Source: Okamejei kenojei
Lineage: Eukaryota
Assembly: GCA_035221665.1 (NCBI GenBank)
Contig: CM069141.1
Location: 54,684,001-54,748,000 of the forward strand
DNA length: 64,000 nucleotides
Reading direction: 5' to 3'
Part shown: positions 29,801-63,825 of the stretch, piece after piece
How positions within the stretch are numbered: the stretch's first letter is position 1
How the letters are laid out: each line of letters begins with the position of its first letter
Program-made: the position numbers and the translations under genes
The notes under the pieces: model-generated
What the model was told of the DNA's origin: nothing
The model's database searches: none
Seen by the model: only the letters and a program-made list of their open reading frames with translations

Positions 29801-32800
29801 AAACTTTTAAAAGGTTCATTGATCTGCAACTTTAACTCAATTTTTTCTTTGCAATGGGTGCTGCGTGATCTGAGGACTGTTCCCAGCATTTGCAGTTTTC
29901 ATGCTCCTGCCTACAGAGGATTGAAATTCCAGGCTATTAGCCACCCTGTTGTCAAAAGTTCTAATGCAGCTATTATTTCAGTGTAAACCCGGACTATGAC
30001 TGGAATTTGCCCATTGTACAGTGGGAAGCATCACTGCCAAATTGGATCCTTCACCAACCAGCCATCCACACACATCATCTGCCTGCGGAGAAGCACTTAC
30101 TTGACATCAAGAATTAGAACTGTGTGATTTATTTGATGCTAATGGATGAGCAGAGAGGGAAGTTGTGACTCTCTGATCTTCCTGAGTGAGGTCCGTTAAA
30201 TTGGATCAAGGATTAAATCCAGGACCTCTGGTCTCTGCAGGCTAATTGTAAACTAGTCAGTGTTATAGGTGAGTAAGAATTTTTGAAGGATGCCAATTTA
30301 ATCTACAAATGTGAAACCTGTGTTTTTGTTTTAACAGAGAAATATACTTTTAAACACTACCCTGTTCTAATTACTGGGACTCTGGCTCTTCTCCTCATCA
30401 TCGTCCTGGTAGTGGTGCTGTGTCTAAGAAAATGTAAGCTTACAGGTAAAGTACTTGAAGAAATGCCTAGTGCATAACATGATTAGAAAAATTATCAATA
30501 GCAATTTTATTTTCTTTGATTAGATGGTACATTGTTATTTGCAATATGGGTATTGTACTGGCTACTTATTTTGTCATGAAGAAACTGCTGAAAGACTTCC
30601 GAGACATAAGAGCAGAATTAGGCCATTTGGCCCCTTGAGTCTGTCAGTCAGTCGTCAAACAAACTATTGTCATTTAGAAATACATTGATATATGCAATTC
30701 CAAACGAAATTCCGTTGCATTTGGCTCCCCATGCAACACGATAATTAACAGAAGGATAAAATGGATAAAAATGGATAAAAGGATAAAAGGATAAATAGAC
30801 AATGGTGGCAGCCCATTACATGGCATTCAGGAGTCTGATGGCTCATGGGAAGAAGCTGTTGCAGAACCTTGACGTTCTGCTCCTTATGCTACAATATCTT
30901 TTGCCCAAGGGCAGCAGAGTGAACAGCCGTGATGGAGATGTGTGGGGTCTTTTATAATACTGCTGGCCTTAGACATGCAACGTTTGGTCGCAATATCCCC
31001 AATTGAGGGGAGAGAAGTCCCGATGATTTTTTCCGCTGTCCTCACCACTGTCTGCACGGACTTCCAGTCGGAGGCTTTACAGTCCCCAAACCAGACAGAG
31101 ATACAGCTGCTCAAAATACTCTCTATGGTGCCCCTGTAGAAAGTGGTGAGGATGGGATGGGGGAGGTGAGCTCTTCTCATCTGGCACAAAAAGTGCAACT
31201 GCTGCTGCGCTCTCTTAACTGTTGATGAGATGGTATTTGACCAGGTCAGACTGTTAGTGATCTGCACCCCCAGGAACTTAGTGTTACTGACCACCTCCAC
31301 ATCGCTGTCATTGATGTGAAGTGGTGTGTGACTCTGCCGGTTTTTCCTGAAGTCGACGATGACGTCCTTGGTTTTTCCACATTCAGGATCAGGTTGTTCG
31401 TATTGCACCAGTCCACCGGTTGTTTCACCTCCTCCCTGTAAGCCATCTCATTGTCGTCCCGGATGAGGCCCACCACTCTTGTGTCATCTGCGTACTTCAT
31501 GATGTGGTTTGTACTAAACCTGGCACAACAGGCTAATGCTTTGCCATTCGATCATGGCTGATCTATTTTTCCCTCTCAACCCCATTCTCCTGCCTTTTCC
31601 CCGTAACCTTTGATGCCCCTACTAATCAAGCACCTATCAATCTCCACTTTTCTGCTGTGGTCTGACCATGGGATAACTGTGTAGCCATCCCGTTGAGTAA
31701 ACAAATACCAACTGTGCCTGAGGCGCTTGTTGATACCTCGTTGATGATGTGATGCAAGAATTATGGTCACAAATCTGCCCACAACAATCCCTTGTGATCC
31801 AAGGGATGAATATTTATCAGGGCACAAGGAGTATCCCCTTTGCTCTTCTGTAATTGGTTCCATAGAAACTCTTGTAACCAATTCAGGAGACAGAAGGGAG
31901 TTGCTTCAACAACTGATCACAGTGATGATGTCTGATGAGGTGACACCTCCAATGCTGCAGCAATCTCACAACACTGCAATGGAGGTGTCAGTTACAACGA
32001 TGTGCTTATGTTTTCTCCAACCTATAGAGTAGCATCTGGAAATGTCCTCAAGTTGCTTCAGTGTAGGTGATTGGACAGATGATATAAACAGAACATCATT
32101 TCATCAGGAGAAGAACCATCAACAACGCAGCATTTACATGCCCACAGGCATTATTGTACATCCATTTATGATAATGCTTTCATAATGAATGGCTCAACTA
32201 GATTCAACTATGCTAATGGAATAGAAATCTAACACAACATTCCATACAAGCTCAGACTCCCATTGCTTACAAATATGTATTCCTAAAATCTTGCAAGGAA
32301 GAAAAGTAACATTTCATGTCCTGTGCGAAGAAAAGGCGATTGAGTTCACCAATAAATGAAATCATACCTTGAACTAATTTGGAATTCTGAACTTATTGGC
32401 GAGACCAGCAATTATTGCCCACCCCCCAGTTGCCCAGCAATGCTAATGAATGCCAGAAGAAAGGCAACAATGTGGATCCAGATTGGCTAAGGTTGCTCTT
32501 TCTTCCTGGAAGGATATCAGTAAACCAGTTGAGTTATTCAACAAACTGATAGTTTGACCATTTTCGCTACTGATGCCACCTTCTACATCAGAATACAAAT
32601 ACCTCGCATTTTATAGGGGTCTTATGTTTTTGAAAAGCAACATGTAATTCACGAATACATAAATTAAACATATAAAACATTTAAACAGGCATACATTGGA
32701 GTGTGCTATTTCAAAAATACTGTATGCAAACTAGGTATTGGTATTTATTAAACAACTGCAATATTTCAAAAATGCATAAATCAAACATGCGGAAAATGCA

Positions 32801-35800
32801 AGGTGCCGGTATATTTTCAAGCTAAACCCAAATTTGCTATGTGTGATTGGAACTTGCACTTTCTGGACTATGAGACCATGCTTGAGAGAATTTGTTTAAT
32901 GTCCAGTTAGCCATGACCATGACATTATTCCTTAACCAAACAAGATTATATGCTCATAATGTGGAGTAAGGTTGGATTTAAGAAAATATTATTTACTTGA
33001 AGACAGTTGAATGACAAACATATCACATTAAAAAAAAATCTTATCACTGCAAAACCATGAATAGTACATAATCATAATTGGTGTTATATCGGAAAGGATT
33101 TCAGCTAGTTGGTAACCAGAGTTTGTGTTGTTCAATGAACGATATTAAAAGGAAAGCTAAGTACATTCTGTTTGGGCAGGTTTGGGGAATCAAAGACAGA
33201 AACCTCCACAATCAAACAGAAACATAGAAGATGAATTCCACCTTTATTCAAATACCAATGAAATCCATCAAACTCAAGGTAATATTGTAATAAGATATAT
33301 TAAATGTATTAAATGGATTTTGCAAGCATTGCTTTCCATTTTCTCAAGGTATTCCATCTCTCCTTTTGATTAACTGCTGTGCGTTTATCCTGTTACAACT
33401 CAGCTGTAAACAGCAAAAGACATTTGTTGATCTTTAAATGCGTTTTCCATTTTTAATGATCATTCTTCATCACAGACATGTGACTGAAAATATTTCCAAT
33501 GTTTAAAATGCAGAAGGGTCCTAAAACACAATCTTCAAAAAGCACAATTTCAGATACCTATTCAAAGACAAGAGGGAATGTACCATCCATATCTTAAGCC
33601 AAGGGTCATCAACCCATTGGCCCCTCCTACACGTCACTGCCCACTGATCATAAAGGCTCATGATAAGTATACATAGATCAAATCTTAATTTGAATGTTTG
33701 CTTATTTGCAAGTGGCAGACTTGTCAGTTGCCAATCAATCAAACAGTCCAGTTAACCTGGATTGATACAAAATGCTGGAGTGACTCAGCAGGACAGGGAG
33801 CAACTCTGGATAGAAGGAATGGGTAATGTTTCAGGTCGAGATCAGAAGAAGGATCTCAACCCAAAACGTCACCCATTCCTTCTATCCAGAGATGCTGCCT
33901 GTCCCATTGTATTACTCCAGCATTTTGTTTCTATCTTCGGTGTAAACCAGCATCTGCAGTTCGTTCCTACACAGTTAACCAGGAGTTGGGCTAGCCATTT
34001 CCTCATTGCTGTCACAAGGTGGTTCTGACCATCTTTTGATGTTGCCCATACATCAGCCTGGGCATACCTACAAAAGTCCCAGTTACTGGTGCCTGGCATT
34101 TGGTAAAGTGTCAGATAATAAAGGCTCTACGGCAGCTCTTAATAAACTAAAGCCAGAAAGAAGCCTTGCACTGTTGAGTCAAGTCAAAATGACCCATTGC
34201 AAAACTTGTTCAGGTTTATTCATTAACTTATGACTGGAAACTTGGATAGAAACTTAAAAAAATGTATTCATTATAAACTCAGGAAATTATGTGCATCCAT
34301 TATAAGGTTTTATACAAAATTACATAATTCAAAATGTTAATCTTCAACCTCTATAAATGTTAAGAAATCGCAGGACTTAACATCCTGCACATGTTTATAG
34401 CACACTTTTTATTTGCCATGTTCTTCATTAATGGTGTAACTAATAGCTCCTTATGTATCCCATTGCACTTACCCACTTATATCTTAGGTATTATAATCCC
34501 ACTACTGAATCTCCAGCAGATATCCTTAAAAAAATGATTAGAGCCAGATTGGTGGATTTACTGCCAATTAGCTTATTCATTGATTGTGAATTCATCATTA
34601 ACAACTTGTAATCACAACTAAATCCACTAATTGCATTGCATTTAGACAATAACTAGACTAAGTGAGACCCGTTGGGTCCCTGTCACACAGGAGGCTTGGT
34701 CCCCCAATGCTATATTCCACCACTCACCCATAGCCCCCAACTGCAGAGGCGCAGCTTATTTCCCCTCATCCCCCAGCACTCCCACCCCCACCTTTTCACC
34801 CTCCCTCTTCTTTCCCCTCTCCTCCCCTCCTCAATCCCTCCCTCACCCCTCTCTCCCTCTCCTTTTCCCTACTCTCAGTTCACTTCCTCCCTCCTTCCAT
34901 AACTCCTCTCCCCTCCCTACCCCCCTTCTATCCCCCTCACTATCCCTCCTCACCTCCCCCAATACCCTCCTCTCCCTCTATTCCCAACTCCCTACCTCCC
35001 CCGCTCCCCCCTCCTCTCCCTCTATTCCCCTCCTTCCCACTCTCCCTCCTCACCTCCCTCTTCTTTTCCCCTCGCCGCGCTGCTTTTGGTCCTACCCTCC
35101 CCAATCCCTCCCCCACCTCTCCTTTCCCCTACCCTCAGTCACTCCCTCCCTTCCTCCATAACTCCTCACCCCTCCCTACTCCCATCCTATCCCTCTACCC
35201 CTCTCCTCCCCCACTCTCCCTCCCCAGAATCTCGAGATTCCCGCTCCTCTCCCTTTTTGCGTTTCCCAGAGGGGCTTCAGCCGTCGGCACCCTTGGATCG
35301 GCCCACAAGCACCAGCAGCTATGGCCGCACCGGCGTGTGGGTGGGGAGTGGGGGGGAGGAGAGAGCACGGAGAAAAGACGGGGGAAGTCATTGGGGAGAG
35401 GGGGGTATCAAGGGGGATTGGGCAGGAGCCAGCGAGGGGGACTAGAGAGGAAGGGGCTGGAGCTGCGGGGCGTTGCGATGTGTGTTTGGGATTCACAGTG
35501 GGCGCTGGACACTCTCCTCCGCCAGGATAAGATTCACCGCTTTCTGTTTGGCGACATCGCCGCGCTGCTTTTGGTCCTTCCGCCGACCACCCACAGCGTC
35601 GTTCAGATCCAGTAAAGATGCGATGGCGCAGGAAAGGGGGACCGTCCCGGGAAGTGACTGGAGAAGAGACCAATCCGCGCGGCGCTGACTGGCAGAAGAG
35701 GAAATCGATCTGCGCACGTGCATTTTTTACAATTTTTAAACCTTGCTACCTTTTACAATATACTACCGATCGGAACGAAACTTGTGGCACTCGCAGCACA

Positions 35801-38800
35801 GGAGAACGGTGAGTGAGCTGGTGAAAAATTGTAGCGCTATCCTGATTAACTTAGATCTCAATAGGGAAATTACACTTTTTTGTAAAATTAGCTGATGAAG
35901 CCTTTATAGAACAAAGCCCTTTAAATTGCTGAAGCAGAAAAATATTTATTTTCCAGGTAGTAACAAGACACTCATACCTGAGACCAATCATAAAGCTGAA
36001 TATATGGCTGTGAACAGGAAGTCAAAGAAAGAAGGTAAATGGATGAATCGTATTCTACATCCCTATTTCCGTATGTATTGTCAAACAAAATGCTGTCAGG
36101 TTTCGTAGAGACAATTTGATTTTAATTATTTGGCCTGGAAATCCTAAAGATCAGTAAAGGTTAATTTTATGTGAGTTTCACAACCTTTAGCAAAATATAA
36201 TTTGCAATGGTGATCCATAATACAACCCTCTGTTTCTGGTGAGTTTAATCATTCTGTACTTCAGTTTACAATTAAAATGCGTGTTTTGCAGTAAAGAAAT
36301 ATAGAGGGGACACATTACCGATCACTCCCTGGTGCTTAGTGTAACCACAGATCCTACATCTAATATAGATACCATTTTCAATTATAGTCTCATTGTCACA
36401 AAAAGTGTAAGATCAAACATCGTACATTGAGAAAGCATAACACTAACAACAGATTATGCATGTTTTAATCCAATTGATTTGTTGTACATCTCAATGGACA
36501 GTATAATTGAGAGTTGCATAGTGAATCCAAAACATTCACCCACTCAAATGATGATCCACTACCATTCAACATACTTCACCAGCATGTAAGTGCTTCTAAA
36601 ACCACTCGAGAAGTATTAACACTAAAGATTATTTCTGGTATGATCATCCCCTATTAGACAGTATTGCTTTTTCCAGAACTGAACACACTGTTCTGACAAG
36701 ATTAATGGTTCAATTAGAAATATTTATTTTCCAGGAGTTAAGAAGACACCATATCCTGAGACAGATGACTTTGCTGAATATTCAAATGTCAATAGGAAGC
36801 CAACACAAGGTAAGAACATTTCTGTGGAGGGATTATTAGTCATAGAAAGTCAGATTTCAGCAAGTGAAACGTTAGCTTCAAGTTAAATGCTTTGGTTTGA
36901 AATCTCTACAAATACATAATGAAAAACTGAGACACTAATTCTCAAATTGCTGCATGTATCCCTATGAGTTCTGGGATATTTTTCTGCACATAATACTGTA
37001 TGCACTGTGTGCCATGTGTACGAATTTGCCTTTTGTGTGATTGTGAGATTGTGTGCAGCACAACAAATTAAGTAAAGTCACAGTGCACTGGCTCCTCACT
37101 TAGCTCTCCGCAGCAGAATCTTGATTTATTAGCTCTCTTGGTCCTATTGAGCTTTCATAATACTCAAGGCTATGTACCACCCTCTACTTTAACATAAGAT
37201 ATCTGTTCAGGCTGCACATTGTTGTGGCTTTGTGGGAATGTACACACTGTGACTTACCCGTGCTAGGATCTGAATCCCTGGCCTTTGCTGACACTCAAGG
37301 TGTAGAGGCTCCCTGTGAGCGTTGGTGTTAGGCTGGCTGCAATGAGCTGTTTGTCTCCTCTGCACTGAGATTTGGGGAGCTCAAACCTGCCCTCTGGCAT
37401 AACAGCAGTGTTGACAGCTACCTATGATGTCTCGTCACTACCTGTTGGACGTGGTTGAAGGTTTTGCCTTCCCCTCTCTAATGGTAACTGTTGAGCTTGT
37501 TAAAAGGGAGAGATCTCTGGGCTGCGGAGAGCTGTGCAACCAAACAAACAGAGGGAAAGTTAACAGTTTTCATCATGTCCACCGGGGGAGGGGGGGAGGA
37601 GGGGGGGTGGGGAGGGGGGGAGGAGAGGGGGGGGGGGGAGGGAGGGGGGGGGAGGGGGGGGGGGGGGAGGGAGGGTGGGGGGGAGGGAGGGGAGGGGGGG
37701 AGGGGGAGGGGGAGTTTCACACAGCAATAGACTGGTGAACGACTCACATTCGATGCCCAGTGCAGCAGTGCTATCAGTAATTCGTCTCTCTGTAAGTAAT
37801 GCATAATGACGACTTTGAGCACCGCTTCCATTATGCTCTAATTCCTGGGAGCGTTCTCCGCACTAAAGCCCAAGTCTGTAAAAAGTGATTCATGCATGGC
37901 TTTGAGATTGTCGATTACACAGCTTCCCAACATTTACTGTCCAGCCTCAGACAGAAAGAGGAAACATTAGGTTATTCGGGAGGCATCAAATTTTGTGGAA
38001 AGGCAGGTGTTTGAGAGCTAGGGGAGGTCGGAGCCAAGAGAATAACAGTGGATGACCAAACAGGAGTCAGCCATTTTATAATTTATAGCATGTAATAAAT
38101 CAGAAACCATGCAGTCTGGGATGTTGCACAGCAGAGTTAATCTGGCAACACTTTTGCCTTGGAAACAGAAAGCTGTGTTTTCAAGTTCCAGTCAAGAACT
38201 TGAATGTGTAACTCAGATCAGTGCTTCAAGGGGGCTGCAAAAGTGCATTTAGTTTAAATCAGCTTGAGAGTTGGTTGAAGATATTTTGAGGGAGAGTAGG
38301 GAGCTGGCATGATGAATGGTTTAATGGTTAATTTATTATCAGCAAGGTGTAGCAAGGTTTAGTGAAATTATTTTTTTGCATACAGATCTGTAAGATTATC
38401 CCTGGTTAAGGCCAGAATACATAGCAACAGCCCACTGTGTTGCAAGAGTCACCAAATGTTGTTGCCATTATCAAAGTCCAAGCTGCAGCTGGCCATTATG
38501 GCCTATTGTAGCCATTGCCTCCATCTGGCTCGCCAGTGAACTATCATCCTTCTCCTCACCCATCCATTTTCAGCCTTTCCCGTAACTCCTAGGGAAATTG
38601 TTCCCTAAACTGTTGGCAACAAAACCAATTAATTGCGTGCTTTATTTATATTGAAACATCAATAATGCTATTTACTTACCAATATTGATATCACCTCAAA
38701 ATTAATCCATTACTTACCTTGTCTGGATCTCTACATATAGAAGCAAATTCTTTGTTTCCATCTTATCTCTGCAGATACTGAGGAAGATATTCATTATGGA

Positions 38801-41800
38801 TCCATCTCCTTCGAGCCGAAAGCATCAGATGGTAAAGTAGATTTTGTTTGAATATATGTTTTCATTTTTTATATTTTGTAGAGGGTAAAATGGACACGGC
38901 TGAGGACACATAGGAGTTGCTAACTGAGTGAATGCTTGTCATTTGCACTGTCCCATACTCAGCTCATTGACTTCAGTATAACTGAAAACAGGCCTATCGC
39001 TTAGCAGTGTAAACATTTACAACCTTCCCCAATGCACACAGACTGTGTTCAGATTTGCTCAACTAGTTCCAGTCCTCCCATAACATGTTCTGACATTGAT
39101 TCTAATAAATGTCAAAATCTACTTATCGGGAAAATTTAGATAAAGAGATTTACTATAACCCAGTGGGGAAAGCATCTTGTTGAATTAAAATGTAATAAAA
39201 ATGAACTGCAGATTCTGGTTTATACCAAAGATAGACATAAAATACTGGAGCATCTCAGTGGGTCAGGCAGCATCTCTGCAGAAAATGGAAAGGTGCAATT
39301 CGGAACGGGGTGCTTCTTCAGACTATCATGTTGAATTCATTTTTTGATGAGTGGTGTCTATCTTGAAACAACATGAACTGATAATATTGGGTGCACCCGA
39401 AATACTGTACATTGCTGAACATGCAACATTCACCCATCCATAGTGCAGGACAAAGCAGCCCACTTGATTGGCACCCCATCATCCAAAACATTAATTCCCT
39501 CCATCATTGGCACACAACGACCGCAGAGTGTACTGTCCACAAAATGAACTGCAGATGCCTTAGGCTTCACAATCGTACCTCCACAACCTGCATCCTCAAT
39601 AAACAAGTAGGACTAAGGCAGCATGGTGTCTGGAAACACCACCATTTGCAGGTTCCCCTCCTAGTTCCATATCATCCTGACTTAGAATATCTTGCTGGTC
39701 CTACATAATTATGGGATCATGCAACTCCTCAACAATAGCACAATGAAACGAGCTTCACCAGATGGATTGTTCTCCAAGAGGCTGTCCAGCATCATCTCAT
39801 CTCAAGGAAATTTTGGAGGAGCAATAAACGCTGGATGTGCCAGCAATGCCCAGATCATCAACAAAGTATATACTACAAAAAGGGAGAGTTTGACGCTCTT
39901 CCCATTGATTAGTGGGGCAATGACATCGCAAGATCATGATGCAACCTTACAGATCTTGCTCAAGTGTGTTTAGAAATATAATGTGGAAACATCCACTGAG
40001 CCCACATCAACCAGCAATCATCCCTACACTAGTTCTACAACCCATTTTCTGATCCTACGCACTAAGGGCAAATTACAGAAGCCAATTAACCGATAAACCT
40101 GCACATTTATGGAATGTGGGAGGAAATGGGAGAACACGGAGAAAACCCATGCAGTCACAAGGAGAAAGTGCAAACCCTGCGCAGACAGCACCCAAGGTCA
40201 GGATCAATCCCAGGTCTCTGGTGCTGTGAGGCGGTATATCTAATGCTGTTCTACTGCTGCACCACTGTGTCTCTGTGTCCAAAATTGCATAACGCTGTCT
40301 TTAACAGACTTTTGTTCAGTTTCACAAATTTCCAAATAAACATCAGTGTGAAATACAGCACATATTCAGTGAACTGGAAGAGGGTGAAATCCAATATCCA
40401 GGCAAAAAGGCTGAAGTTGGGCTCTGGTCCATGCAATGCAGTTAACCCTGACTGCTTTTGCAAGATGCATTTCCCACAAGAACAATGATCAGTTTAGTTT
40501 AGTTTAGTTTAGTTTAGAGATACAGCGCAGAAACAGGCCCTTCGGCCCACTGGGTCCACGCCGTCCAGCGATCCCCACACACCAACACTATCCTTCACAC
40601 ACTAGGGATATTTTTTACATTTTACCAAGCCAATTAACCTACAAACCTGTACATCTTTGGAGTGTGGGAGGAAACCAAAGATCTCTGAGAAAACCCATGC
40701 AGGCCACGGGGAGAACGTACAAACTCCGTATAGACAGCACCCGTAGTCAGGATCAAACCCGGATCACTTTCCTCTTTGGAGAAATAAATCTTTGGGTTAT
40801 CTTTTGGTAACCACTTGAATTTTCATAGTTTTGACGCACATGCACTTATATCCTCGATAATATAATAAGCAAAAGAGTGATGATCAGTGACATGACTACT
40901 ATTGTTTTCATGTTGCCTCTACACCTCAGTGGAAGTAATAGTGATAACCATACAGCATGTGAACAGGCGCTACAGCAATTAAGTCCATGCTGACTGTCCA
41001 GTACACACACTAATTCTACATCAATACCATTTTATTCTCCACACATTCCCATCACTTTCTTCCCAGATTCAACTGGCATCCATTGGGGGAGTCCAGAACC
41101 AAGGGTCACAGTTTAAGAATAATGGGTAGGCCATTTAGTACTGAGATGAGGAAAAACCTTTTCACCCAGAGAGTTGTGAATCTGTGGAATTATCTGCCAC
41201 AGAAGGCAGTGGAGGCCAATTCACTGTATGTTTCCATGAGTGAGTTACATTTAACTTTTTGGGCTAAAGGAATCAAGGTATATGGGTAAAAGCTGGAATG
41301 AGGTACTGATTTTGGATGATCAGCCATGATCAAATTGAATGGCAGTGCTGGCTCGAAGGGCCGAATGGCCTACTCCTGCACCTATTTTCTATGTTTCTAT
41401 GTTTCTGCATTCCTGTGGGTAATATACCGTGCCCAAATGTCCTACCAACCTGCACATATATGACACGTGGGAAAAAAACGGAGGACCTTAAGGAAACCAT
41501 GCTGTCATAGAGAGGCCATGCAAATTCATCCTGGCCAGAGCTGGAAGCCAGGGTTAAAACTGCATCACTGGCACAGTGAGGCAGTAACTCTACCTGCTGC
41601 ACCATTGTGACACCTTCATTTCCTGCACTTATTTACCAGGAGATTCATCTGAAAACACTCATATCCACAGCTCCTGGCTGAGCCAGAAACGTTTTGTGCT
41701 GGCTCCCAAGTATCATGAAGGAGTTTAGTTCACAAATGGCCATCCCCGCAGCTTACTTTGTAAATGCAGTGCCTAGAACACACACTGCAACTGGGTTTTC

Positions 41801-42885: not shown

Positions 42886-42971
42886 AATAAATTGAACTTT
42901 TCAGATAGGTTTCCTGCCAATTCAACTACCATTTCAGAATTTAAATAACTAACAATGATAATTTAAATAAA
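42886..42971 (+). promoter_or_regulatory. Candidate polyadenylation signals of gene A
   Basis: AATAAA at 42886-42891 and 42966-42971, downstream of the stop codon. Confidence 0.35.
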
Positions 42972-50440: not shown

Positions 50441-51362
50441 TTTAGGTTTGTGGAGATCTACAATAGAGTCTAAGGATCAGCGCAGTAGACCCAACCTTAC
50501 ACCCGAACACCGAATAGATGAATTTTAAATCTCTTTTATGTACCTCACGAATATATCTCCATTGGTCCAATGTGTAACTCCATTCAAACTGAAAAATACA
50601 ATAGATATAAAAGGATAGTAAAGAATAGTTAAAGAAATTAATAGTATGTGTAAAGAAAGAAAGAACTACAACTAAAGTAGTTGTAGTTTGTGCTAGCCAT
50701 ACTAACTTGGCAATACATCTAAGGACTTCCGGCATTGATGTTATTAACTTGGCCAGCTCCTAGATTTAGGGAATTATTATTCCATAATAATATTTTAGCG
50801 GGGGTATAATATTAAAGGAAAGAAAAAAGAGGTAGGGATCATCATATGAAGGTATCTATATCTAAAATTAACTTAGAAATCTAAGCAGTATTAAACATAA
50901 AGAATATAAAGGCTATATATAAAAAAAAAGGGGGATACGAAAATACTATAGAACAAGGAGTAAAAATTTAAAGTACAAAATGAAAATTGTTATTAAAAAG
51001 AAAGATCTCCAAATGAGATCCATCGCTATATTTAACTCTATTCATTAACGAGACATTAGTTGTTAATTATTAGTGATATTAATTAGCAATAGTGAGCAAT
51101 CTTGATTAATAAAAATCATACTAATAATAAAACCGCGTTGTGATTTTAGTATATGTGTTATTTGTTTATGTTAGTTATATGTTAAGACTAATTGTCAGTA
51201 TCCAGAAAACGCCTTCCAATCCAGTTTTTTCCTCTTCATTCCATACGGCATTGTCCATTCCTTCTAGTCCCATATTATCATATGAAATCTCACAGGGTGT
51301 TAAGAGTCCGTGTTGGGTCTCTAAAAGTAGTAAGAGTCAGTATGTTTGCTTGTAGATACTTT

Positions 51363-52466: not shown

Positions 52467-54173
52467 TCGGCACAGTCGGTACAGAAACGGCAGGCAGTGT
52501 GTAGCAGACAGCCGGTAAGTCTTTTTAAACCCCCGTTTTTTCCGATTTTTTTGCGGAGCTGGCTGGCGCTATCCTCTAGGGCTCCATAGCGCCACCGGAA
52601 GTCTCTTGCTTCAAAGTTTTTTGAGGGGGAGTGAGCAAGTGAAGCTGAGAGAGGGTGATAAACCTGATGAGGCCAGGATTGCTGGGGTTCTGCTGGTGCT
52701 AATGACAGGACCTCATCAACATATAGTAGCTGCATCTCCCTTCCGTCAGATAACAGAATGGACCATATAGGATTGTCCCAATGAATCATGAGACAGAGGG
52801 GAGGATGTCTGCAAATGTGAGGGGGAATGGAGTGGATGATTGGGAGGAGAGACAATGGCATGAATAATTATCAGACATTGTGGGAAGCTAGAAAATGAAT
52901 AGCTGGCGTTCTGGGAGAGATATTTGAATATTTTATCCTCGGTGAAGGTACTGGAAACTTTGTACGGTGCTTGGAGTTGTACTTTTATTTCAAAAGCGAA
53001 GGAACTATAGGCCAGTGAACCTGACCTCAGTGATGCCAGTTAAGCCAAGGCAGGATTGATATGATTGTTGGCAGGATTGTGGAGAGTGTTGTACAACAGG
53101 GAGACCAGGGTACAGGGGTGACACGGGGTGCTAAAGATGATGTTTGGCACCCTTGCCATTAATGGTAAGGATAATAGTATATGAATTGGAACAACATGTA
53201 GCAGCTGTACAGTACATTGACGAGATGGGATTTTGAATATTATGTGGTGTTATGGTCGCCCTGTTATAGGAATGATATAACTAAACTGCAATACATGCAG
53301 AAAAATAATCACAAGGGTCTTATTAGAATGTTGAGGGCTTGAGTTACTGTATAAGGAGAGGCCATATGGGCTGGAGATAGAAACCAGACTGTTCAGGGTT
53401 AATGTAACAGGTATTAAGTCACACAAGGCCAGTCAGGGAAGAACAATGAATGACCTGGCGGGGGGTGAGGGGTGGTGCTGTGAGGGGAGGGGGTCGAACA
53501 AAAGAGGGGACCTGGCGTGGATACTTTGTAACTTTGTCAGCACCGTATGAGGTGACTGTCTGCATACCTTGGGTATTCAAGCAAAGAATTTCACTGTGAC
53601 TTGTCACATGTGACAATAAAGTATTCAGTTCAATTTAAATTCAAATGTGGTACTTTCTGCCTCATATAATTATCGCTGTGAAGGGTCAATTAAAAACTTC
53701 AAAACAGATCAATCTATGATGATGATGATAATACTGGTCACTGTACTGCCATTAATTTCAGATCAGCCTTTTATCTATTTGAACAGGTTTGAAGAACAGA
53801 ATAGGCTGCTTCTGTTCTTATATTCCTTTGCCATTCATGGTACAGATTAATTGTTCATTAATTTATTGATCCTTAATAACTGAGTGGGTCATCTTGATTC
53901 AGAATTTATATATTCTTGCTAGGCTTAGATATTCCATGAGACGAGGCTTACTTGTTTAAATGTAATCCAGAATCAATAGGTATCAACCCAGTTCTATAAC
54001 CATCCATTCTATAGAAAAAACTGTGCTTGTTTCTTCCAACTTTTTTCTCCATATCGAAACTGGGAAATTTCTCCACCAATGCTGCCTGGCCTGCTGAGTA
54101 TTTCCACCATATTCTGTTTTTATTATGTCACATTCCCAGCATCTGCAGGTTTGCTTTTCCAAATTAGGATGTT

Positions 54174-54233
54174 CTACTGAATTACTGTGCCATATATTAC
54201 TGATGTTTCCTCTCCACCTGAAGCCCATTGACC
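54174..54233 (-). CDS. Gene B terminal coding exon (ITIM VIYGTV)
   Basis: tttgtacag|GGTCAA encodes GQWASGGEETSVIYGTVIQ*, with TAG at 54176-54174. Confidence 0.8.
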   Translation of the reverse strand, partial: GQWASGGEETSVIYGTVIQ

Positions 54234-57200
54234 CTGTACAAAGTTGAAAATGAGGTGTTAGATTTTGCAGTAAATTCTCTTTCCTTAATCTGAAACATTA
54301 TTGAGATCTTTTATCATTTTACTTACTGCATCTGAAGGTTGCTGGTTGGACTGTTCACTTTGGTTATTACCTTTGAAGTAATTAGAGATTAGGGTTAGTA
54401 CAGTTAATTAAAAAGTAGGCATGTTGCTTGTACAATATAACTTTCAAATTACCTGGTCTCTTTTGAAAACTGACCGCAGCATAATAAATTTCTTCTTCAC
54501 TGTATAGTTCTGAGTTCGGGACTGTCTGACTATCTCCTGGTTCCTTTTGATCTTCATGGACTGTGAAGGTGAATTAAATCAGTTTGATACATGAATACGT
54601 ATTTGAGAAATCCATCATGCTTTTCTCTCAGCTGCTACTTCACTTAATGAGTGTTAGGAAGTAAGACTTTCTGATATATGTTTTGCCCAAGTAGTTATCT
54701 TGTGAGAGATTTATCTCACTTAGGCACAGGAGAAAGAAATGAGCAGGAAATTTAGCCAAGAGTGTGCTATTAATTTAGCAGATGAGCCGCAAAAGTCTTG
54801 GTGAGTGGATAAGTACAGCTGCTAACCCATCACTCCCAGTGAATAACACTTATTAGAAAAAAAAGACACAAAATGCTGGAGTAACTTAGCGGGTTAGGTA
54901 GAATCCTCTGCAGAACATGGAAGGTGGCATTTCTGGATGGTCCTGACCCAAAACATCATCTACCCATGTTCTCCAGAGGTGCTGCCTGACCCACTGAGTT
55001 TGTGCCATGTGTGCCACTATGTGCCTTTTTTGTAAGCCAGCATGTGCAGCTCCATGTCTCTAATACTTATTGGAAGATGCTTTACACACTAGTCCAAAAG
55101 CAAAATACTGCTGACACTGGAAATCTGAAATAAAACTGAAAATACTAGAATTGTTGATTGGGATGGGCATCATCTGCTGTGGTTGCCGATGTTTCAGATT
55201 GATGCCTTTCGTCAGAAGGGATGGGTAAGCAGGATGGTGCAAATTGGGATGCAACGTTTTAGCTGATTTGTTGCATTACTTTAGAGAATGAGACAATTTA
55301 GGAAGAACACTGGAACAAAAGCATGAATACACATTTTGACAACCAGCTAGATTGAGGCAAAGGTGAAGACGGGCAACCTTACAGGGGTGAGAATATGTAA
55401 AAGAAAGGTGATTGTTCAGCTTTGGAAGCAACGCGTACACATAAACATGAATGAAAAAAGGAACTGGAGATGCTGTTTTCCCCAAAAAAAGTGCTGAAGT
55501 GACTCGGGAGGTTAGGCACATCACTGGACGACATGGACAGGTCATGTTTTGAGTCAGTACCCTTCTGCAGACTAATTGTAGAAGGGGAGAGAAAGCTGGG
55601 AAAGGGGTGGGAGTGGGACATCTGGCAAGTGAGAGGTGGATACAGGCGAAGGGGGGTTAGTTGGTAGATGGGTTTGCAAAGGCCATAGATGAAAAGAAGA
55701 CAAAAGGGTGAAGGAAAGCGAAATATGAAGCCAGAGGAAGAGATATAGGTGGAAGATGACGGGGAAGGGGGAAGTGAGATAGTGGTAGAAATTGATGTGC
55801 ACAGGGAAGAGTGGGAAGAAAAACACAGAGGGAGTGGTAGTTTGGTACCAACCTGTTGTTCATTTTGGCAGGAAATTAATAACAAAAGGTGGCAAGTTAT
55901 CTATGCGGTGAGGGATTGCAAAGGTGCAAAGGGATGTAAGTGTCCTTGTAGATAATTTGTAATGGTTAATATGCATGTATATTATGCAATTAAGAAAGTT
56001 AATGTTATTATTAGGATCTGAAGCAGGATCCTCAACTGAAACATTGCTTATCCATTAACTCCACAGCTGTTGCCTGACCAACTGAGTTATTCCAGTATTT
56101 TGTGTTTTGCTGAAAATTCCTTGGAACTGTGTTGTTATTTATTGTGAGGGGAATTGAATACAAATATAGGGAGACTTTGGTTATATCAGACATAGTTCAT
56201 GCCACATCTAGAGTAACATGTATGGTATTGGTCTCATTAGTGATAGAAGAATGTTATCACATGCAAAACAGATCCGAGAAGTTTGCCACATTAATAACTT
56301 GAATAGGCAGGTTGTCTTATAAATAAAGATCAGGCAGGCTCGGCTTATATCTGTACGAGAATAAAAGATTAAAAGGGGCATAACTGAAACATGTTAGACT
56401 CGGTGAGGACTTGAATGATGGATGTGAAAAGCATGATTCATCTTGACAGTTGTCACCCATTAAAATTAAGGTGTTGAAGAGGTTCATGTGTTGTATAAAC
56501 ACTCAGTTTAATACATAAACAATACAGCTCAATAATTAGTATAAAAAGGCAAGGTGTGTTAACACGTGGACTGTGAAGGCTAGCTCTGTCATCTGCTGCA
56601 CCCCGTCAGCTGACCATGGAGGTTGGCGTTGATTGATCGGCCCAGATCATGCCAGTTCACGTGGGATTTTGAGCTCAACGAACAAAGGTTCGAGACCAAA
56701 GTAACTCGGCCACATGATGGCACCACAGTGTCACCCATTTAACACAGAGTAAAGATGGAGATTTTTTTCAATTGAGGCTGCTGAGTCTTTAAATGTTCTT
56801 CCTCAAAGATTAGTGATAGAGGAGGAAACTGCAATCAGACCGGACACATATTTATGAAGTGCTGAGTGGCTAGTTCCTTTTCCAATTTCTTACGTATCTA
56901 TAACTTCTGTCATAGAAGTCCACAAAATTTACAGACGAAAATATGTTTTTTGTGAGACTAAATCTAAAGAGTTGGAAACTGTAAATGTACTAAATTGTGA
57001 AAGCTAACGGCTAATGATTTCCACACAAAATGCCTAATGAAATATACATTTATTAATATTTACTTCCATTTTTCAAGGCTTAACATATGATAGTAGTTAT
57101 GGATGTGAATGAGTGATAAATTTGATGAAGTTTATCGATAAAATGACAGAAAGTAATCAGTCCAATACAATTATATTGCCTTTAAAATGTGCTTGATAAA

Positions 57201-60200: not shown

Positions 60201-63200
60201 ACATCGGGAACAATCTTCCTGCATCTAGCCTGTCCAACCCCTTAAGAATTTTGTAAGTTTCTATAAGATCCCCTCTCAATCTCCTAAATTCCAGAGAGTA
60301 TAAACCGAGTCTATCCAGTCTTTCTTCATAAGACAGTCCTGACATCCCAGGAATCAGTCTGGTGAACCTTCTCTGCACTCCCTCTATGGCAATAATGTCC
60401 TTCCTCAGATTTGGAGACCAAAACTGCACGCAATACTCCAGGTGTGGTCTCACCAAGACCCTGTACAACTGAAGTAGAACCTCCCTGCTCCTGTACTCAA
60501 ATCCTTTTGCTATGAAAGCTAACATACCATTCGCTTTTTTCATTGCCTGCTGCACCTGCATGCCTACTTTCAATGACTGGTGTACCATGACACCCAGGTC
60601 TCGCTGCATCTCCCCTTTTCCTAATCGGCCACCATTTAAATAATAGTCTGCTTTCCTGTTTTTGCCACCAAAGTGGATAACCTCACATTTATCCACATTA
60701 TACTGCATCTGCCAAACATTTGCCCACTCACCCAGCCTATCCAAGTCACCTTGCAGTCTCCTAGCATCCTCCTCACAGCTAACACTGCCCCCCAGCTTAG
60801 TGTCATCCGCAAACTTGGAGATATTGCCTTCAATTCCCTCATCCAGATCATTAATATATATTGTAAATAGCTGGGGTCCCAGCACTGAGCCCTGCGGTAC
60901 CCCACTAGTCACTGCCTGCCATTGTGAAAAGGACCCGTTTACTCCTACTCTTTGCTTCCTGTTTGCCAGCCAGTTCTCTATCCACATCAATACTGTTATC
61001 AATGTTGATCATCCATTTCACTTCTGTGTTTCCACCTTTACCCTTGATTCCTTATCAAGCAATTTAAGCAATTTATTAAAATTAAGTATTAGGATTAATA
61101 CTTATGAAGGAAACTGTTCAAAACATTGATTGTGCAACAGAACTTGCAATTACCTGGTCTCTTTTGGAATCTGACAGCAGCATAATGAATTTCTTCACTG
61201 CACCGTTCAGTGTTTGGGTTTGTCTGACTACTTTCTGGTTCCCTTTGATCTTCATTGACTGTGAAATGAATTGAATTAGTTTAATTGTTGAAAACGTGTT
61301 TGAGAAATTCAGCATTTTTTTCTCTCTGCAACTGTTTCACGTTGCCAGCTTAAGCATTTATCCTGTAATAAATACGGGATAAATATTTTTAACTTACATG
61401 GACACTGGAAAAGGGATGAGGAGGAAATTAACATGAGGTTTTATGCTGAGCTGATGCAACTTCATTACAAGACCAATAGTACCTTGGTGAATGGATAAAG
61501 CTAGATACTAACCCTCCACTCCTGGCAACTAATGCTCTGGTACCCATGCTCTGCTGGATAAACCAAATGCAAAATATTCTAGATGCTGACAAAACAAAAC
61601 AGACAATATTATAATTATGTACCAGTGAGAACTGTGGGAAGAGAAACTGAGTCAAATTTCAGATTGATAACTTTTCATTAGAAACTATTCTTAAAATTGA
61701 TCCTAAAAAAAAAAGTCAACTAGTTGTCTTTCCACTGATGCTGACTGGCATGATGAGCAATTCCAGCCTTTTCTGTTTTATCTCTGCAGAGTAAAATCAT
61801 GTTTGATTCACGCCGATAGGAGCCCTAATAGTCTCACAGAATCAGAGAACATTTACAAGGCAAGAGACAGTTGACTCATTATGTCTGTGCAGGTGAAAAA
61901 TTAACTGACCAACCTCTAATGTCACCAATGACTTTTAATGATAGGCCCACAGCTCTTCAGGCCAGGCCTCTTCAATAATTGTGAAGAAAGTTCCTACCTT
62001 AGCCCTCATCTCAGATATGACTTTCAAAGCTGCCACTATCTACATGAAAATTAATTCCCTCATTTCCTCTCAAAACCTCCTATTACTCTGCCCTTTTTGA
62101 TGATGTTTTGATTCATCAGCTAAGAGAAATAGATCTATTCTACTTACTCTATGTAAATCCCCCAAAACCCATTTACAACTCAATTAAATTCGATCTTAGC
62201 CTTCTCTGTTACTAAGAAAACAACTGCAGCTTTCCCGAGCTTACCTCCTAGTTGCAATTTTTATAGTTGGTCGTAAATCTCTTAAGTACCACCTCCAGTG
62301 CAACTACATCTATCCCGTAATGTAGTGATCAGAACTCTGATCGGTATTCAACTGTATCCAATCGGTGTATTTTTTTCTGTGTGCATTTTTTTTTTCAGGA
62401 TATGGATATATATTGCAAGCATTTATTGCCCCCCTCTCAAATTGTCCACGAGAAGATGGTGGGAAGCTCTCCTTTTCATCTGCACACTGACTTTTAGCAC
62501 ACTGTTCCCTGCACATTATTTGCACCTCAACCTCTCATTTCGGGCCATTGAGTTTCCCAATGCAGTTGTTTAAAACTTTAAAATGAGCCTTAAGTTTTGT
62601 GCATATGTTTTAGTTTAGTTTAGTTTAGAGATACATATGGAAACAGGCCCACTGAGTCCACACTGACCATTGATCACATGTTCATACGTTCTACGTTATT
62701 CCACTCCCCATACATTAAGGGCTTAAGACCAATTAGACTACACATCCACACATTTTTTGGAATGTGGGGCAGAGATGCCAACCCTAAATTTAGTTCACAG
62801 TAACATTCAACCCATTTGTCCGTAACAAATGGGGTTAAATGCATTTCTCTCCGTAACATACTCACTTGGGGTTGTTGCCGACGGCTATGCGCCTGCGCAC
62901 TGGTGCAGATCAGTGGGCTGCCGGCGGGCGGGTGCGGCACATGCGCACTTGGCAAGGTTGCCGGCGGGTCTGCGCCTGCGCACTGGGTGGGGGTGGGGGG
63001 GAGGCCCGGTGATGGGGCTGCCGCGAGCGGCCGGCTGGCGGCAAGAAAGTGCCGCTGATCGCGCGGGCCGGCGCCGCCCGGGCTCTGGGCCGGGCGTGGC
63101 GTGGCTCGAAATGGCACCAGGCCCGGCAACCCTCCCCCGCTGCGCACGCGCGGCCACTGGGGCCCGGCAACCCTCCCCCACTGCGCACGCGCGCCCACTA

Positions 63201-63825
63201 GGGCCTGGCAACCCTCCCCCACTGCGCACGCGCGGCCACTGGGGCCCGGCAACCCTCCCCAACTGCGCAGGCGCGGACACTAGGGCCCGGCAAAGTGCCG
63301 CTGATCGCGCGGGCCGGCAAACCGGGGACACATGGCGCCGGCGTTCACCACAGGAGGAACACCGGCGCGGCGGTGTTCCGTAACAGCATGTTTGGCTGCC
63401 GGAACACCGTAAAAAGGTTATTTCGCCGGGACAAAATACGGCGAATCCGGGACACTTGGCATCTCTGGTGGGGTGAAATTGGAGCACCTGTAGGAAACTC
63501 ATTGGGTCACAAAGAGTACGTGAAAATTTCACACAAACAGCACCAGAGGTCAGGATTGAGCCAGGGTCTCTGGCACTGTGAGGTAACAGCTCTACCAGCT
63601 CCACCACTGTGCTGCCCGTTTCTTCTCAGAATGGGAACTTGTAATGCTGCCTTGTCCTCATGACACAGCTCACAATTGTCTGGCATTTAAATCAGTGCAG
63701 GTACCAGTTTCTCCTACCTGGTTTATGGATCCTGCTGCGATAGATAATCGTTGCTCCAACAAGGCCAAGAAGAAGCACAAGGACCATGGGTGTGACTATG
63801 TGGCTCAAATAAGTCTTAACTGATG
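54174..63825 (-). CDS. Gene B (partial, 3' part): convergent ITIM receptor paralog; its ectodomain lies beyond the right edge of the window
   Basis: Exons 63825-63718 (TM), 61258-61154, 54560-54453, 54370-54327 and 54233-54174. All are GT-AG and phase-compatible, and the exon architecture matches the gene A tail. Confidence 0.82.
54327..54370 (-). CDS. Gene B 44-nt micro-exon (phase 1 to 0)
   Basis: cttcaaag|GTAATAAC...GATGCA|gtaagt encodes GNNQSEQSNQQPSDA. Confidence 0.75.
54453..54560 (-). CDS. Gene B cytoplasmic exon (ITIM IYYAAV), duplicate of 61154-61258
   Basis: ttcacag|...CCAG|gtaatt, 108 nt. VHEDQKEPGDSQTVPNSELYSEEEIYYAAVSFQKRP. Confidence 0.82.
58234..59303 (+). mobile_element. Penelope-like element, 5'-truncated, with 15-bp TSD
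   Basis: GIY-YIG FTCTSSNLIYCIRCSRCQMIYIGETKRRLGDRF. TSD ctgtatgataacact at 58219-58233 and 59304-59318. Confidence 0.92.
59212..59239 (+). ncRNA. Minimal hammerhead ribozyme-like motif in the Penelope tail
   Basis: CUGAAGA-A-GGGU(CUCG)ACCC-GAAAC-GUC: conserved core, helix II and palindromic ACGU helix III. Helix I is weak. Confidence 0.55.
59877..60996 (-). mobile_element. Young CR1-clade LINE 3' fragment with intact RT C-terminal frame
   Basis: ORF 59974-61002 has SGVPQGSVLGP, KFADDTKL and RPHLEYCVQFW; (catagaaa)n tail. Confidence 0.93.
61154..61258 (-). CDS. Gene B cytoplasmic exon (ITIM IHYAAV)
   Basis: tttcacag|...CCAG|gtaatt, 105 nt. VNEDQREPESSQTNPNTERCSEEIHYAAVRFQKRP. Confidence 0.82.
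62770..63467. mobile_element. Non-autonomous DNA transposon (hAT-like TIRs) nested in a V-SINE
   Basis: TIRs cagagatgccaa / ttggcatctctg. 6-bp direct repeat gtgggg at 62764-62769 and 63468-63473. Internal GC-rich tandem repeats of about 40 bp at 63120-63290. Confidence 0.75.
63718..63825 (-). CDS. Gene B transmembrane exon
   Basis: tttctttccag|...CCAG|gtagga, 108 nt. ASVKTYLSHIVTPMVLVLLLGLVGATIIYRSRIHKP. Confidence 0.82.

What the first reader, a model, noticed from the sequence alone, without database searches (positions are those of the whole stretch)
30338..63825. Tail-to-tail pair of paralogous ITIM receptors with a conserved exon blueprint
Seen: gene A (+) and gene B (-) both have a 108-nt TM exon, an E(E/D)IHY-type ITIM exon, a 44-nt phase 1-to-0 micro-exon and a terminal exon with SVIY(AQI/GTV). 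Their stop codons are about 11.5 kb apart, 6.6 kb of which is one L1. The ORF track misses gene B's cytoplasmic exons. Inference: the window samples a clustered multigene family of inhibitory receptors, organised like LILR/CD300/NITR/DICP clusters, and it may also include activating partners.
Basis: partly seen in the sequence, partly recalled or inferred. Interest (0 to 1): 0.8.

Follow-up and report, generated by a model that had tools for sequence, protein, structure and literature searches.

The report
Skate CD4-like inhibitory receptor gene pair
Two neighbouring skate genes that point at each other encode cell-surface immune receptors with inhibitory tails; they belong to a large, unnamed receptor family of sharks, rays and early ray-finned fishes whose outer part is built like CD4 and LAG-3 and which also has activating members.

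Summary
Each is matched at the right place in proteins of other species. A spliced contig covers gene B's last three exons, including the 44-nt micro-exon.

The reading is also supported, with corrections.
- Gene A runs from 5169 to 42617. It has eight Ig exons (two V-C2-V-C2 blocks).
Two of them carry YxN motifs.
- Its fourth Ig exon is 250 nt long and breaks the frame. This is either an assembly slip or a null allele.
- Gene B has two copies of its ITIM exon.
- Gene B's ectodomain lies outside the window. Its Rhinoraja orthologue, identical over the last two exons, has the same four-domain ectodomain type as gene A.

The family is called "uncharacterized" in every database seen. It occurs in chimaera, sharks, rays, bichir, sturgeon, eels and salmonids. 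It has ITIM forms and forms with a lysine in the membrane span and a short tail.

Profile and fold comparisons place it nearest to LAG-3 and CD4. A language-model search places it nearest to teleost G6F-like. It fails the tail criteria of all three.

It is a new member of a known kind (paired Ig-receptor clusters). Inhibitory function is inferred, not shown.

The parts
5169..5256 (+). Gene A leader exon (MKLQFF...SITAG), phase 0 to 1, donor GTAAGT
   Evidence: Leader scan. 75% identical to the N-terminus of Rhinoraja P0181. Frame check.
6908..7249 (+). Gene A D1: V-like Ig exon without the canonical cysteines, ends ...YELFGLK
   Evidence: P0181 residues 20-143, 70%.
10390..10656 (+). Gene A D2: C2/I-type Ig exon
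   Evidence: Pfam Ig_3/ig. P0181 85%. Frame check.
14461..14802 (+). Gene A D3: V-set Ig exon
   Evidence: Pfam V-set. P0181 70%. Frame check.
18201..18450 (+). Gene A D4: C2 exon with WxC. It is 250 nt long, so the phase 1-1 frame is broken. The G run at 18220-18223 appears one base longer than the orthologue's reading frame implies.
   Evidence: Alignment with the D8 exon shows 11-nt and 6-nt gaps. In-frame stops follow when it is spliced from D3. Sequence. Rhinoraja P0181 reads VTAEETEGDTVTL here.
21500..21844 (+). Gene A D5 (second-block D1)
   Evidence: P0181 84%.
23872..24144 (+). Gene A D6 (second-block D2). The F-strand Cys is replaced by Trp (YTW), as in shark and ray orthologues.
   Evidence: P0181 91%. 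YTW is also present in P0001, P0002, P0177 and P0181.
24249..24587 (+). Gene A D7 (second-block D3, V-set)
   Evidence: Pfam V-set, 4.9e-8. P0181 88%. Frame check.
26593..26859 (+). Gene A D8 (second-block D4, C2 with WKC)
   Evidence: Pfam Ig_3, 7.6e-9. P0181 87%. Frame check.
30338..30445 (+). Gene A transmembrane exon, 108 nt, phase 1-1
   Evidence: 89% to P0181.
33180..33278 (+). Gene A cytoplasmic exon 2 with HLYSNT (YxN), 99 nt.
   Evidence: 72% to Pristis P0189.
35957..36034 (+). Gene A cytoplasmic exon 3a (AEYMAV), 78 nt.
   Evidence: 87.5% to P0181.
36735..36809 (+). Gene A cytoplasmic exon 3b (AEYSNV), 75 nt. It is a duplicate of 3a. Whether it is used is unknown.
   Evidence: 68% to Hemitrygon P0260. 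Leucoraja P0212 has two such exons in its model.
38775..38831 (+). Gene A ITIM exon (DIHYGSI), 57 nt
   Evidence: 94% to Leucoraja P0211.
42131..42174 (+). Gene A micro-exon, 44 nt, phase 1 to 0
   Evidence: It stood out among eight 44-nt AG..GT candidates by its GTAAGT donor and its likeness to family tails. The match to P0260 and P0005 is weak. There is no RNA evidence.
42549..42617 (+). Gene A terminal coding exon (SVIYAQI, stop)
   Evidence: 77% to P0260.
45990..52900 (-). LINE in the intergenic space: T21 tail at 45990-46010, ORF2 in four pieces, ORF1 at 51363-52466
   Evidence: The 5' end is approximate. The L1 clade was not verified.
53886..54233 (-). Gene B terminal exon (CDS 54174-54233, SVIYGTV, stop) with at least 288 nt of 3' UTR
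   Evidence: X1 contig on 53886-54232 and X2 contig on 53891-54193. 18/18 identical to P0175.
54327..54370 (-). Gene B micro-exon, 44 nt, phase 1 to 0
   Evidence: 13/13 identical to P0175. The 40 unplaced letters in X1 contig 2 fit its length.
54453..54560 (-). Gene B ITIM exon 2 (EIYYAAV), 108 nt
   Evidence: X1 contig piece on 54448-54563. It reads close to the single ITIM exon of Rhinoraja P0265.
61154..61258 (-). Gene B ITIM exon 1 (EIHYAAV), 105 nt, duplicate of exon 2
   Evidence: 82% to Pristis P0172, whose model has three such exons. Its use in mRNA was not shown here.
63718..63825 (-). Gene B transmembrane exon, 108 nt, phase 1-1
   Evidence: 80% to P0175.

Best explanation
The window holds two convergently transcribed genes of one unnamed immunoglobulin-superfamily receptor family.

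**Gene A** (5169-42617, + strand) encodes, in order:
- a leader;
- eight Ig domains, made of two V-C2-V-C2 blocks;
- a membrane span;
- a tail spread over six or seven small exons, with YxN motifs and two canonical ITIMs (IHYGSI and VIYAQI).

**Gene B** (- strand) has only its membrane span and tail in the window. The tail has three ITIMs: two from a duplicated exon, plus VIYGTV. Its orthologues have a single V-C2-V-C2 ectodomain of the same family.

**Shown:**
- the exon structure;
- homology to the family;
- the CD4/LAG-3-like build of the ectodomain, in a predicted model;
- splicing of gene B's last three exons;
- inhibitory and lysine-TM forms in the family.

**Inferred:**
- After ligand binding and tyrosine phosphorylation, the ITIMs recruit SH2 phosphatases (SHP-1, SHP-2 or SHIP type) and damp signals from activating receptors.
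- YxN recruits Grb2.
- The lysine-TM relatives signal through ITAM adaptors.

Ligand and cell type are unknown.
For: **Exons.** Borders and phases are consistent. Every exon is matched in order by proteins of other species.

**Family size and range.** A D3-exon profile found 181 proteins at E<=0.001, 51 of them at E<=1e-10. They come from chimaera, sharks, rays, bichir, sturgeon, eels, tarpon, pike and salmonids. All carry automatic or empty names.

**Orthologues.**
- Gene A resembles the eight-Ig proteins Rhinoraja P0181 and Mobula P0002.
- Gene B resembles the four-Ig proteins P0175/P0265, P0172 and P0059.

**RNA.** A spliced contig in run X1 covers gene B's last three exons.

**CD4/LAG-3-like build.**
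- The family profile against PDB puts LAG-3 first (1.6e-13) and finds CD4 at 1.9e-10.
- The AlphaFold model of P0059 has single long strands across D1-D2 (122-137) and D3-D4 (323-338).
- Foldseek rank 1 is LAG-3 and rank 3 is CD4.
- In VIA-align the top 23 rows are all CD4. D3D4 lies on CD4 D1D2 with Z 15.5, rmsd 2.8 A, over 173 of 177 residues.
- hhalign pairs D1 with D3 and D2 with D4, each at E 4.2e-10. Cross pairs are weak.
- WxC is conserved in D4.

**Tail types across the family** are listed.
Against: - No function was measured, and ITIMs are motifs only.
- Gene A's D4 exon breaks the frame in this assembly, so gene A may be null here.
- There is no RNA evidence for gene A.
- Gene B's ectodomain was not seen in this genome.
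- Run X1 is of unknown kind by its record. Its RNA nature is inferred from the intron-skipping contig and from empty unique intron bins.
- The CD4 likeness rests on a predicted model and on small margins over other multi-Ig proteins: pIgR 2.6e-12, nectin-1 Z 14.2.
- CD4 and LAG-3 did not appear among the named proteins of the D3 search.
Confidence: 0.75

Rival explanations
1. Gene A is a pseudogene or null allele in this animal. A one-base gain in the D4 exon stops translation after three Ig domains, so only gene B is a working receptor here.
For: The D4 exon is 250 nt long. Read from D3 it hits a stop after about 21 codons. The Rhinoraja orthologue reads through the same place.
Against: - All other 15 exons are open with good splice sites.
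- After the shift the rest of D4 is still open in the other frame. So the change is very recent or is a homopolymer error.
- An assembly gap lies 3 kb upstream, at 15189-15324.
- Skipping D4 would keep the frame.
Confidence: 0.3
2. The likeness of the two tails comes from exon shuffling or convergence. On this view gene B's ectodomain in this genome is unrelated to gene A's.
For: The two tails share no nucleotide similarity outside repeats. The TM exons are unlike in sequence.
Against: - Every protein found with a gene-B-type tail has the D1-D4 ectodomain of this family: P0059, P0172, P0173, P0175, P0265, P0192.
- The micro-exon motif NQQ.SD is shared between A-type and B-type proteins.
Confidence: 0.04
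3. The family, or gene B's single-copy orthogroup within it, is the cartilaginous-fish counterpart of teleost G6F-like. If so these are thrombocyte receptors rather than lymphocyte checkpoint-type receptors.
For: - The Atlas's nearest clusters for a shark member and a tarpon member are both 'g6f-like' (0.96-0.97, 193-202 shared features), followed by G6b-B.
- G6fL has four Ig-like domains, one TM and a YxN motif (PMC3528668).
- Gene A and many relatives have YSN just after the TM.
Against: - No ITAM was found in gene A, gene B or any clear family member.
- No protein named G6F-like came up in three word searches.
- The pike and salmonid members found are all unnamed. From own knowledge, orthologues of zebrafish g6fl usually carry that name, so these are probably paralogues.
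- Atlas scores for unrelated multi-Ig families are nearly as high (0.95).
Confidence: 0.2

Closest known systems
CD4 / LAG-3 family
   Same: - V-C2-V-C2 ectodomain, one phase-1 exon per domain.
- D1 resembles D3 and D2 resembles D4, as expected from a V-C2 duplication.
- A long strand runs from each V domain into the next C2 domain in the model. PMC10768021 describes this as rare and typical of CD4/LAG-3.
- WxC in the F strand of D4.
- Best PDB matches by profile (LAG-3) and by fold (CD4).
   Different: - D2 has YxC, not WxC.
- No Cx(C/H) LCK motif.
- The tail is multi-exon and lacks (F/Y)xxL(D/E).
- It is a multigene family with 4, 8 or 16 Ig domains and with lysine-TM members.
- Sequence identity to CD4 is only 11-19%.
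- Synteny with the CD4/LAG-3 region was not tested.
Teleost G6F-like (G6fL), the thrombocyte collagen receptor (PMC3528668)
   Same: [quoted passage not shown] It is the nearest named cluster in the ESM Atlas. From own memory of Ohashi et al. 2010 (not readable here), that paper reported similarity of G6F-like to CD4/LAG-3.
   Different: G6fL signals through an ITAM split over two exons. These genes have ITIMs and no ITAM. No alignment to a named G6F-like sequence could be made. Gene A has eight Ig domains.
Paired inhibitory/activating Ig-receptor clusters (KIR, LILR, CD300, NITR, DICP, MDIR)
   Same: - Clustered paralogues.
- ITIM tails alongside short-tailed members with a charged TM residue.
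- Neighbouring pairs with near-identical ectodomains and opposite tails (Rhinoraja P0269/P0207).
- Frequent exon and domain duplication.
   Different: The ectodomain is built of rigid CD4-like V-C2 rods, not of C2-only or single-V units. No sequence relationship to those families was seen.

Membership tests
CD4/LAG-3 | Four extracellular domains in the order V-C2-V-C2 | tested here: met
   Pfam hits per exon. hhalign pairs D1 with D3 and D2 with D4. Model secondary structure. Gene A has the unit twice.
CD4/LAG-3 | Continuous beta-strand from V strand G into C2 strand A, giving rod-like D1D2 and D3D4 (PMC10768021) | tested here: met
   Strands 122-137 and 323-338 in the AlphaFold model of P0059. 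D3D4 superposes on CD4 D1D2 at 2.8 A over 173 residues. This is a predicted model of a shark orthologue, not of the window's protein.
CD4/LAG-3 | WxC in strand F of both D2 and D4 (PMC10768021) | tested here: not met
   D4 and D8 have WKC/WxC, nearly invariant across the family. D2 has YxC and gene A's D6 has YTW.
CD4/LAG-3 | CD4 tail with Cx(C/H), or a LAG-3 single-exon tail with (F/Y)xxL(D/E) | tested here: not met
   Tail peptides are listed. Neither motif is present. Gene A has six or seven exons after the TM exon and gene B has three or four.
CD4/LAG-3 | Location in the conserved CD4/LAG-3 genomic neighbourhood | not testable with these tools
G6F-like | Four Ig-like domains, a single TM and a cytoplasmic YxN (PMC3528668) | tested here: met
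   Gene A has HLYSNT and AEYSNV. YxN is common in the family. Gene B lacks it.
G6F-like | ITAM in the tail, split over two exons | tested here: not met
   No Yxx(L/I)x6-12Yxx(L/I) in either tail. None was found in clear family members. The regex hits in B-type tails are pairs of ITIM exons.
G6F-like | Sequence homology to named G6F-like proteins | tested here: inconclusive
   It is the nearest Atlas cluster by features. No named G6F-like protein was returned, so no alignment was possible.
Paired ITIM / activating Ig-receptor clusters | Canonical ITIM (S/I/V/L)xYxx(I/V/L) in the tail | tested here: met
   Gene A: IHYGSI and VIYAQI. Gene B: IHYAAV, IYYAAV and VIYGTV.
Paired ITIM / activating Ig-receptor clusters | Relatives with a charged TM residue and a short tail | tested here: met
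   The TM motif GYLLVKL with tails of 2-44 residues occurs in P0007, P0008, P0021, P0036, P0195, P0198, P0201, P0202, P0205, P0207 and P0214. None lies in this window.
Paired ITIM / activating Ig-receptor clusters | Binding of SH2 phosphatases and an inhibitory effect | not testable with these tools
   This needs biochemistry.

The most novel reading that the evidence does not exclude
This family is a third, multigene branch of the CD4/LAG-3/G6F-like lineage. It would be old enough to be shared by chimaeras, sharks, rays and early ray-finned fishes. It would have evolved as paired inhibitory and activating receptors that multiply the rigid V-C2-V-C2 rod to 8 or 16 domains. If so, CD4-type rods were once a general innate receptor scaffold, and CD4 and LAG-3 are the two survivors in tetrapods.
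Probability: 0.3. Interest if true: 0.7.

Novelty: new member of a known kind. Interest (0 to 1): 0.55.

Why it matters
Cartilaginous fishes are the oldest living animals with antibody- and T-cell-based immunity, yet few of their innate receptor clusters have been described.

This family is large and conserved from chimaera to salmonids. It is present in public annotation only as "uncharacterized", or under mistaken names such as VCAM1-like, CEACAM5-like, obscurin-like and CD276 homolog.

It shows the classic paired inhibitory/activating design on an ectodomain built like CD4 and LAG-3. That makes two questions testable:
- whether the CD4/LAG-3 scaffold arose within a broader receptor family;
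- what such receptors bind (MHC class II, collagen as for G6F-like, or something else).

Tried and rejected
- **DNA comparison of the two tails.** blastn and tblastx found only repeats.
- **D1 against PDB.** The D1 profile found nothing.
- **Pfam.** Exons and full-length relatives gave only generic Ig families.
- **A second leader or TM exon between the two Ig blocks.** None was found, so one eight-domain gene is more likely than two tandem genes. The orthologues agree.
- **MDIR.** The only paper found mentions it in passing. I dropped it because no sequence link appeared.
- **Literature.** Searches for a described V-C2-V-C2 ITIM family, and for the nurse-shark 'obscurin-like' entry, gave nothing relevant. 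Ohashi et al. 2010 is not held.
- **Closed or failed tools.** So gene B's ectodomain and the neighbours in other species could not be fetched.
- I stopped that step and worked from coordinates instead.
- **Joined models.** The spliced gene models were searched exon by exon only.
- **Runs X5 and X7.** They proved to be genomic DNA of related species (continuous over introns, about 4% different) and say nothing on expression.
Full report
**1. What is in the window**

Gene A, plus strand:

| Exon | Coordinates | Length and phase | Motif |
|---|---|---|---|
| TM | 30338-30445 | 108 nt, phase 1-1 | |
| ITIM | 38775-38831 | 57 nt | DIHYGSI |
| Micro-exon | 42131-42174 | 44 nt, phase 1 to 0 | |
| Terminal | 42549-42617 | 69 nt | SVIYAQI, stop |

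Gene B, minus strand:

| Exon | Coordinates | Length and phase | Motif |
|---|---|---|---|
| TM | 63718-63825 | 108 nt, phase 1-1 | |
| ITIM 1 | 61154-61258 | 105 nt | EIHYAAV |
| ITIM 2 | 54453-54560 | 108 nt | EIYYAAV |
| Micro-exon | 54327-54370 | 44 nt, phase 1 to 0 | |
| Terminal | 54174-54233 | 60 nt | SVIYGTV, stop |

- All borders are AG/GT and the phases fit.
- The stop codons are 11.56 kb apart.
- About 6.5-6.9 kb of the space between them is a minus-strand LINE. It has a T21 tail at 45990, an APE endonuclease, an RT and a coiled-coil ORF1. I did not verify that it is of the L1 clade.

**2. Gene A is much larger than the finding's span**

Upstream of the TM exon lie a leader exon (5169-5256) and eight Ig exons, each in phase 1-1. 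They form two blocks of four: 6908-18450 and 21500-26859.

- Between the blocks only the exons are alike, at 75-81% DNA identity. The introns are not.
- No leader or TM exon lies between the blocks.
- The Rhinoraja protein P0181 and the Mobula protein P0002 run colinearly through leader, eight domains and TM.

So gene A is a single eight-Ig gene.

- 33180-33278, with HLYSNT;
- 35957-36034, with AEYMAV;
- 36735-36809, with AEYSNV. This is a duplicate of the previous exon, and its use is unknown.

**3. A defect in gene A**

The fourth Ig exon (18201-18450) is 250 nt long. Compared with its twin at 26593-26859 it has gaps of 11 and 6 nt.

- Rhinoraja reads VTAEETEGDTVTL at this place. That implies a 12-nt gap, so the window appears to have one G too many in the run at 18220-18223.
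- Spliced from D3, the exon meets a stop after about 21 codons.
- Everything else in the gene is intact.

**4. RNA evidence for gene B**

Runs X1 and X2 come from one study and their kind is not on record.

- They have no contigs over the unique intron bins 56700-57299. X5 and X7 cover those bins continuously with about 4% differences, so X5 and X7 are genomic DNA of relatives.
- X1 contig 2 (988 nt) lies on 53886-54232. Then come 40 unplaced letters. Then it lies on 54448-54563, and 485 letters run on beyond the stretch.
- With the terminal exon ending at 54233 and ITIM exon 2 at 54453-54560, the unplaced part equals 1 + 44 - 5 letters. That is the 44-nt micro-exon, with a few letters that fit either side.
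- X2 has a contig on 53891-54193.

This is support from spliced contigs in one study. It does not show whether ITIM exon 1 is used.

**5. The family**

A profile of the two D3 exons was searched against 1.84 billion representatives. It found 181 proteins at E<=0.001.

- The clear members come from Callorhinchus, many sharks and rays, Polypterus, sturgeons, eels, tarpon, pike and salmonids.
- Their names are "uncharacterized", "hypothetical", or stray labels such as VCAM1-like, CEACAM5-like, obscurin-like and CD276 homolog.

Three membrane and tail types recur:

| Type | Membrane span | Tail |
|---|---|---|
| A-type | hydrophobic | long, with YSN, IHYGSI, VIYAQI |
| B-type | hydrophobic | one to three I(H/Q/E)YAAV exons plus VIYGTV |
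| Lys-TM type | GYLLVKL, lysine in the span | 2-44 residues, no tyrosine motif |

- Rhinoraja P0207 (lysine type) and its neighbour P0269 (A-type tail) fall in one 90% cluster, and their ectodomains read near-identical. This is the hallmark of paired receptors.
- Gene numbers and shared contigs suggest clustering in at least six species. In catshark the B-type, A-type and lysine-type genes are LOC119965405, 06 and 07. That echoes the A-B adjacency seen here.

**6. Are A and B paralogues?**

Within the window only motifs and exon architecture link them.

- Gene B's tail exons are identical (micro-exon 13/13, terminal 18/18) or 80% identical (TM) to Rhinoraja P0175/P0265. Its ITIM exon 1 is 82% identical to Pristis P0172.
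- Those proteins, and Heterodontus P0059, have a D1-D4 ectodomain with the same signatures as gene A: WEW.PH, AGLFT, YE.F.IK, LSCTISRL, FEDAG.Y.C, LTCSVS, W.C.
- The micro-exon motif NQQ.SD is shared by A-type and B-type proteins.

I take paralogy as well supported. It has not been seen directly in this genome.

**7. What the ectodomain resembles**

- Pfam sees only generic Ig domains.
- A ten-sequence family profile against PDB ranks LAG-3 first (1.6e-13) and finds CD4 at 1.9e-10. The alignments run across a V-to-C2 junction and include the WxC of the C2 domain. pIgR and CEA are close behind.
- An AlphaFold model of P0059 has pLDDT 78 and pTM 0.68. It has single long strands bridging D1-D2 and D3-D4.
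- Foldseek puts LAG-3 first and CD4 third.
- VIA-align gives CD4 in all top 23 rows. D3D4 lies on CD4 D1D2 at Z 15.5 and 2.8 A over 173 of 177 residues. The first other protein is nectin-1 at Z 14.2 and 4.6 A.
- hhalign pairs D1 with D3 and D2 with D4.

PMC10768021 names V-C2-V-C2, the bridging strand and WxC in D2 and D4 as the family's marks. Here the first two are met and the third only in D4. The CD4 and LAG-3 tail criteria are not met.

The ESM Atlas places a shark member and a tarpon member nearest to clusters named g6f-like. G6fL has four Ig-like domains, a YxN motif and an ITAM (PMC3528668). This family shares the first two features and lacks the ITAM. I could not obtain a named G6F-like sequence to align.

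**8. How it most likely works**

- Shown: type I receptor genes with canonical ITIMs and YxN motifs.
- Inferred from what is established for ITIM receptors: ligand binding and Src-family phosphorylation lead to docking of SHP-1, SHP-2 or SHIP, which damps ITAM signalling.
- Inferred: YxN binds Grb2, as stated for G6F and G6fL in PMC3528668.
- Inferred: lysine-TM relatives pair with acidic-TM ITAM adaptors.
- Ligand, cell type and the role of eight versus four domains are open.

**9. Verdict**

These are real members of an unstudied but annotated family. It is a new member of the known kind "paired Ig-receptor cluster", with a CD4/LAG-3-like scaffold that gives it some evolutionary interest.

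**Limits on the work**

Noticed in passing
window 18201-18450 (G run at 18220-18223): Gene A's fourth Ig exon is 250 nt long and breaks the reading frame. One G too many, judged against the Rhinoraja orthologue's reading. It is either an assembly slip or a recent null allele.
   Followed up: partly
window 15189-15324: A 136-base run of N (assembly gap or masked stretch) lies in the intron between gene A's D3 and D4 exons. It was left untouched.
   Followed up: no
window 23872-24144: In gene A's sixth Ig domain the F-strand cysteine is replaced by tryptophan (YTW). The same replacement is kept in catshark, nurse shark, manta and Rhinoraja orthologues, so it is an old, conserved loss of the disulfide.
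   Followed up: partly
window 61154-61258 and 54453-54560: Gene B's ITIM exon is duplicated together with its upstream intron flank. The sawfish orthologue model has three copies and Rhinoraja has one, so ITIM number varies between batoid lineages.
   Followed up: partly
window 35957-36034 and 36735-36809: Gene A's EY..VNRK exon is duplicated in tandem. A Leucoraja relative (P0212) includes two such exons in its protein model.
   Followed up: partly
window 45990-52900, minus strand: An AT-rich LINE (27-34% GC) with a T21 tail. ORF2 is split into four open pieces and ORF1 is intact with a coiled coil. ORF1 did not match Pfam's L1 ORF1 families, so the L1 label is unverified.
   Followed up: partly
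window 4789-4997, 11443-11647, 18543-18752, 22225-22383, 24681-24832, 28545-28705: A repeat of about 150-210 bases recurs in gene A's introns on the plus strand at 67-77% identity. In one frame it reads ...CVEF..SPCD..GFL.V.... It is probably a SINE or a LINE tail.
   Followed up: no
window 13317-13850 (+), 59974-61002 (-), 30884-31408 (-): Transposon remains lie in the introns: a DDE_3 transposase piece, an RT piece in gene B's intron, and an ORF matching Pfam ALKBH8_N in gene A's intron.
   Followed up: no
related proteins P0269 and P0207 (Rhinoraja longicauda LOC144599921 and LOC144599922): These neighbouring genes fall in one 90% cluster with near-identical ectodomains. One has an ITIM tail and the other a lysine-TM short tail. 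They form a textbook inhibitory/activating pair in this family.
   Followed up: partly
related protein P0001 (Scyliorhinus canicula LOC119965406, 1710 aa): This catshark model strings four V-C2-V-C2 blocks (16 Ig domains) before one TM and an ITIM tail. It is either a real giant receptor or a fusion of tandem genes by the annotation pipeline.
   Followed up: no
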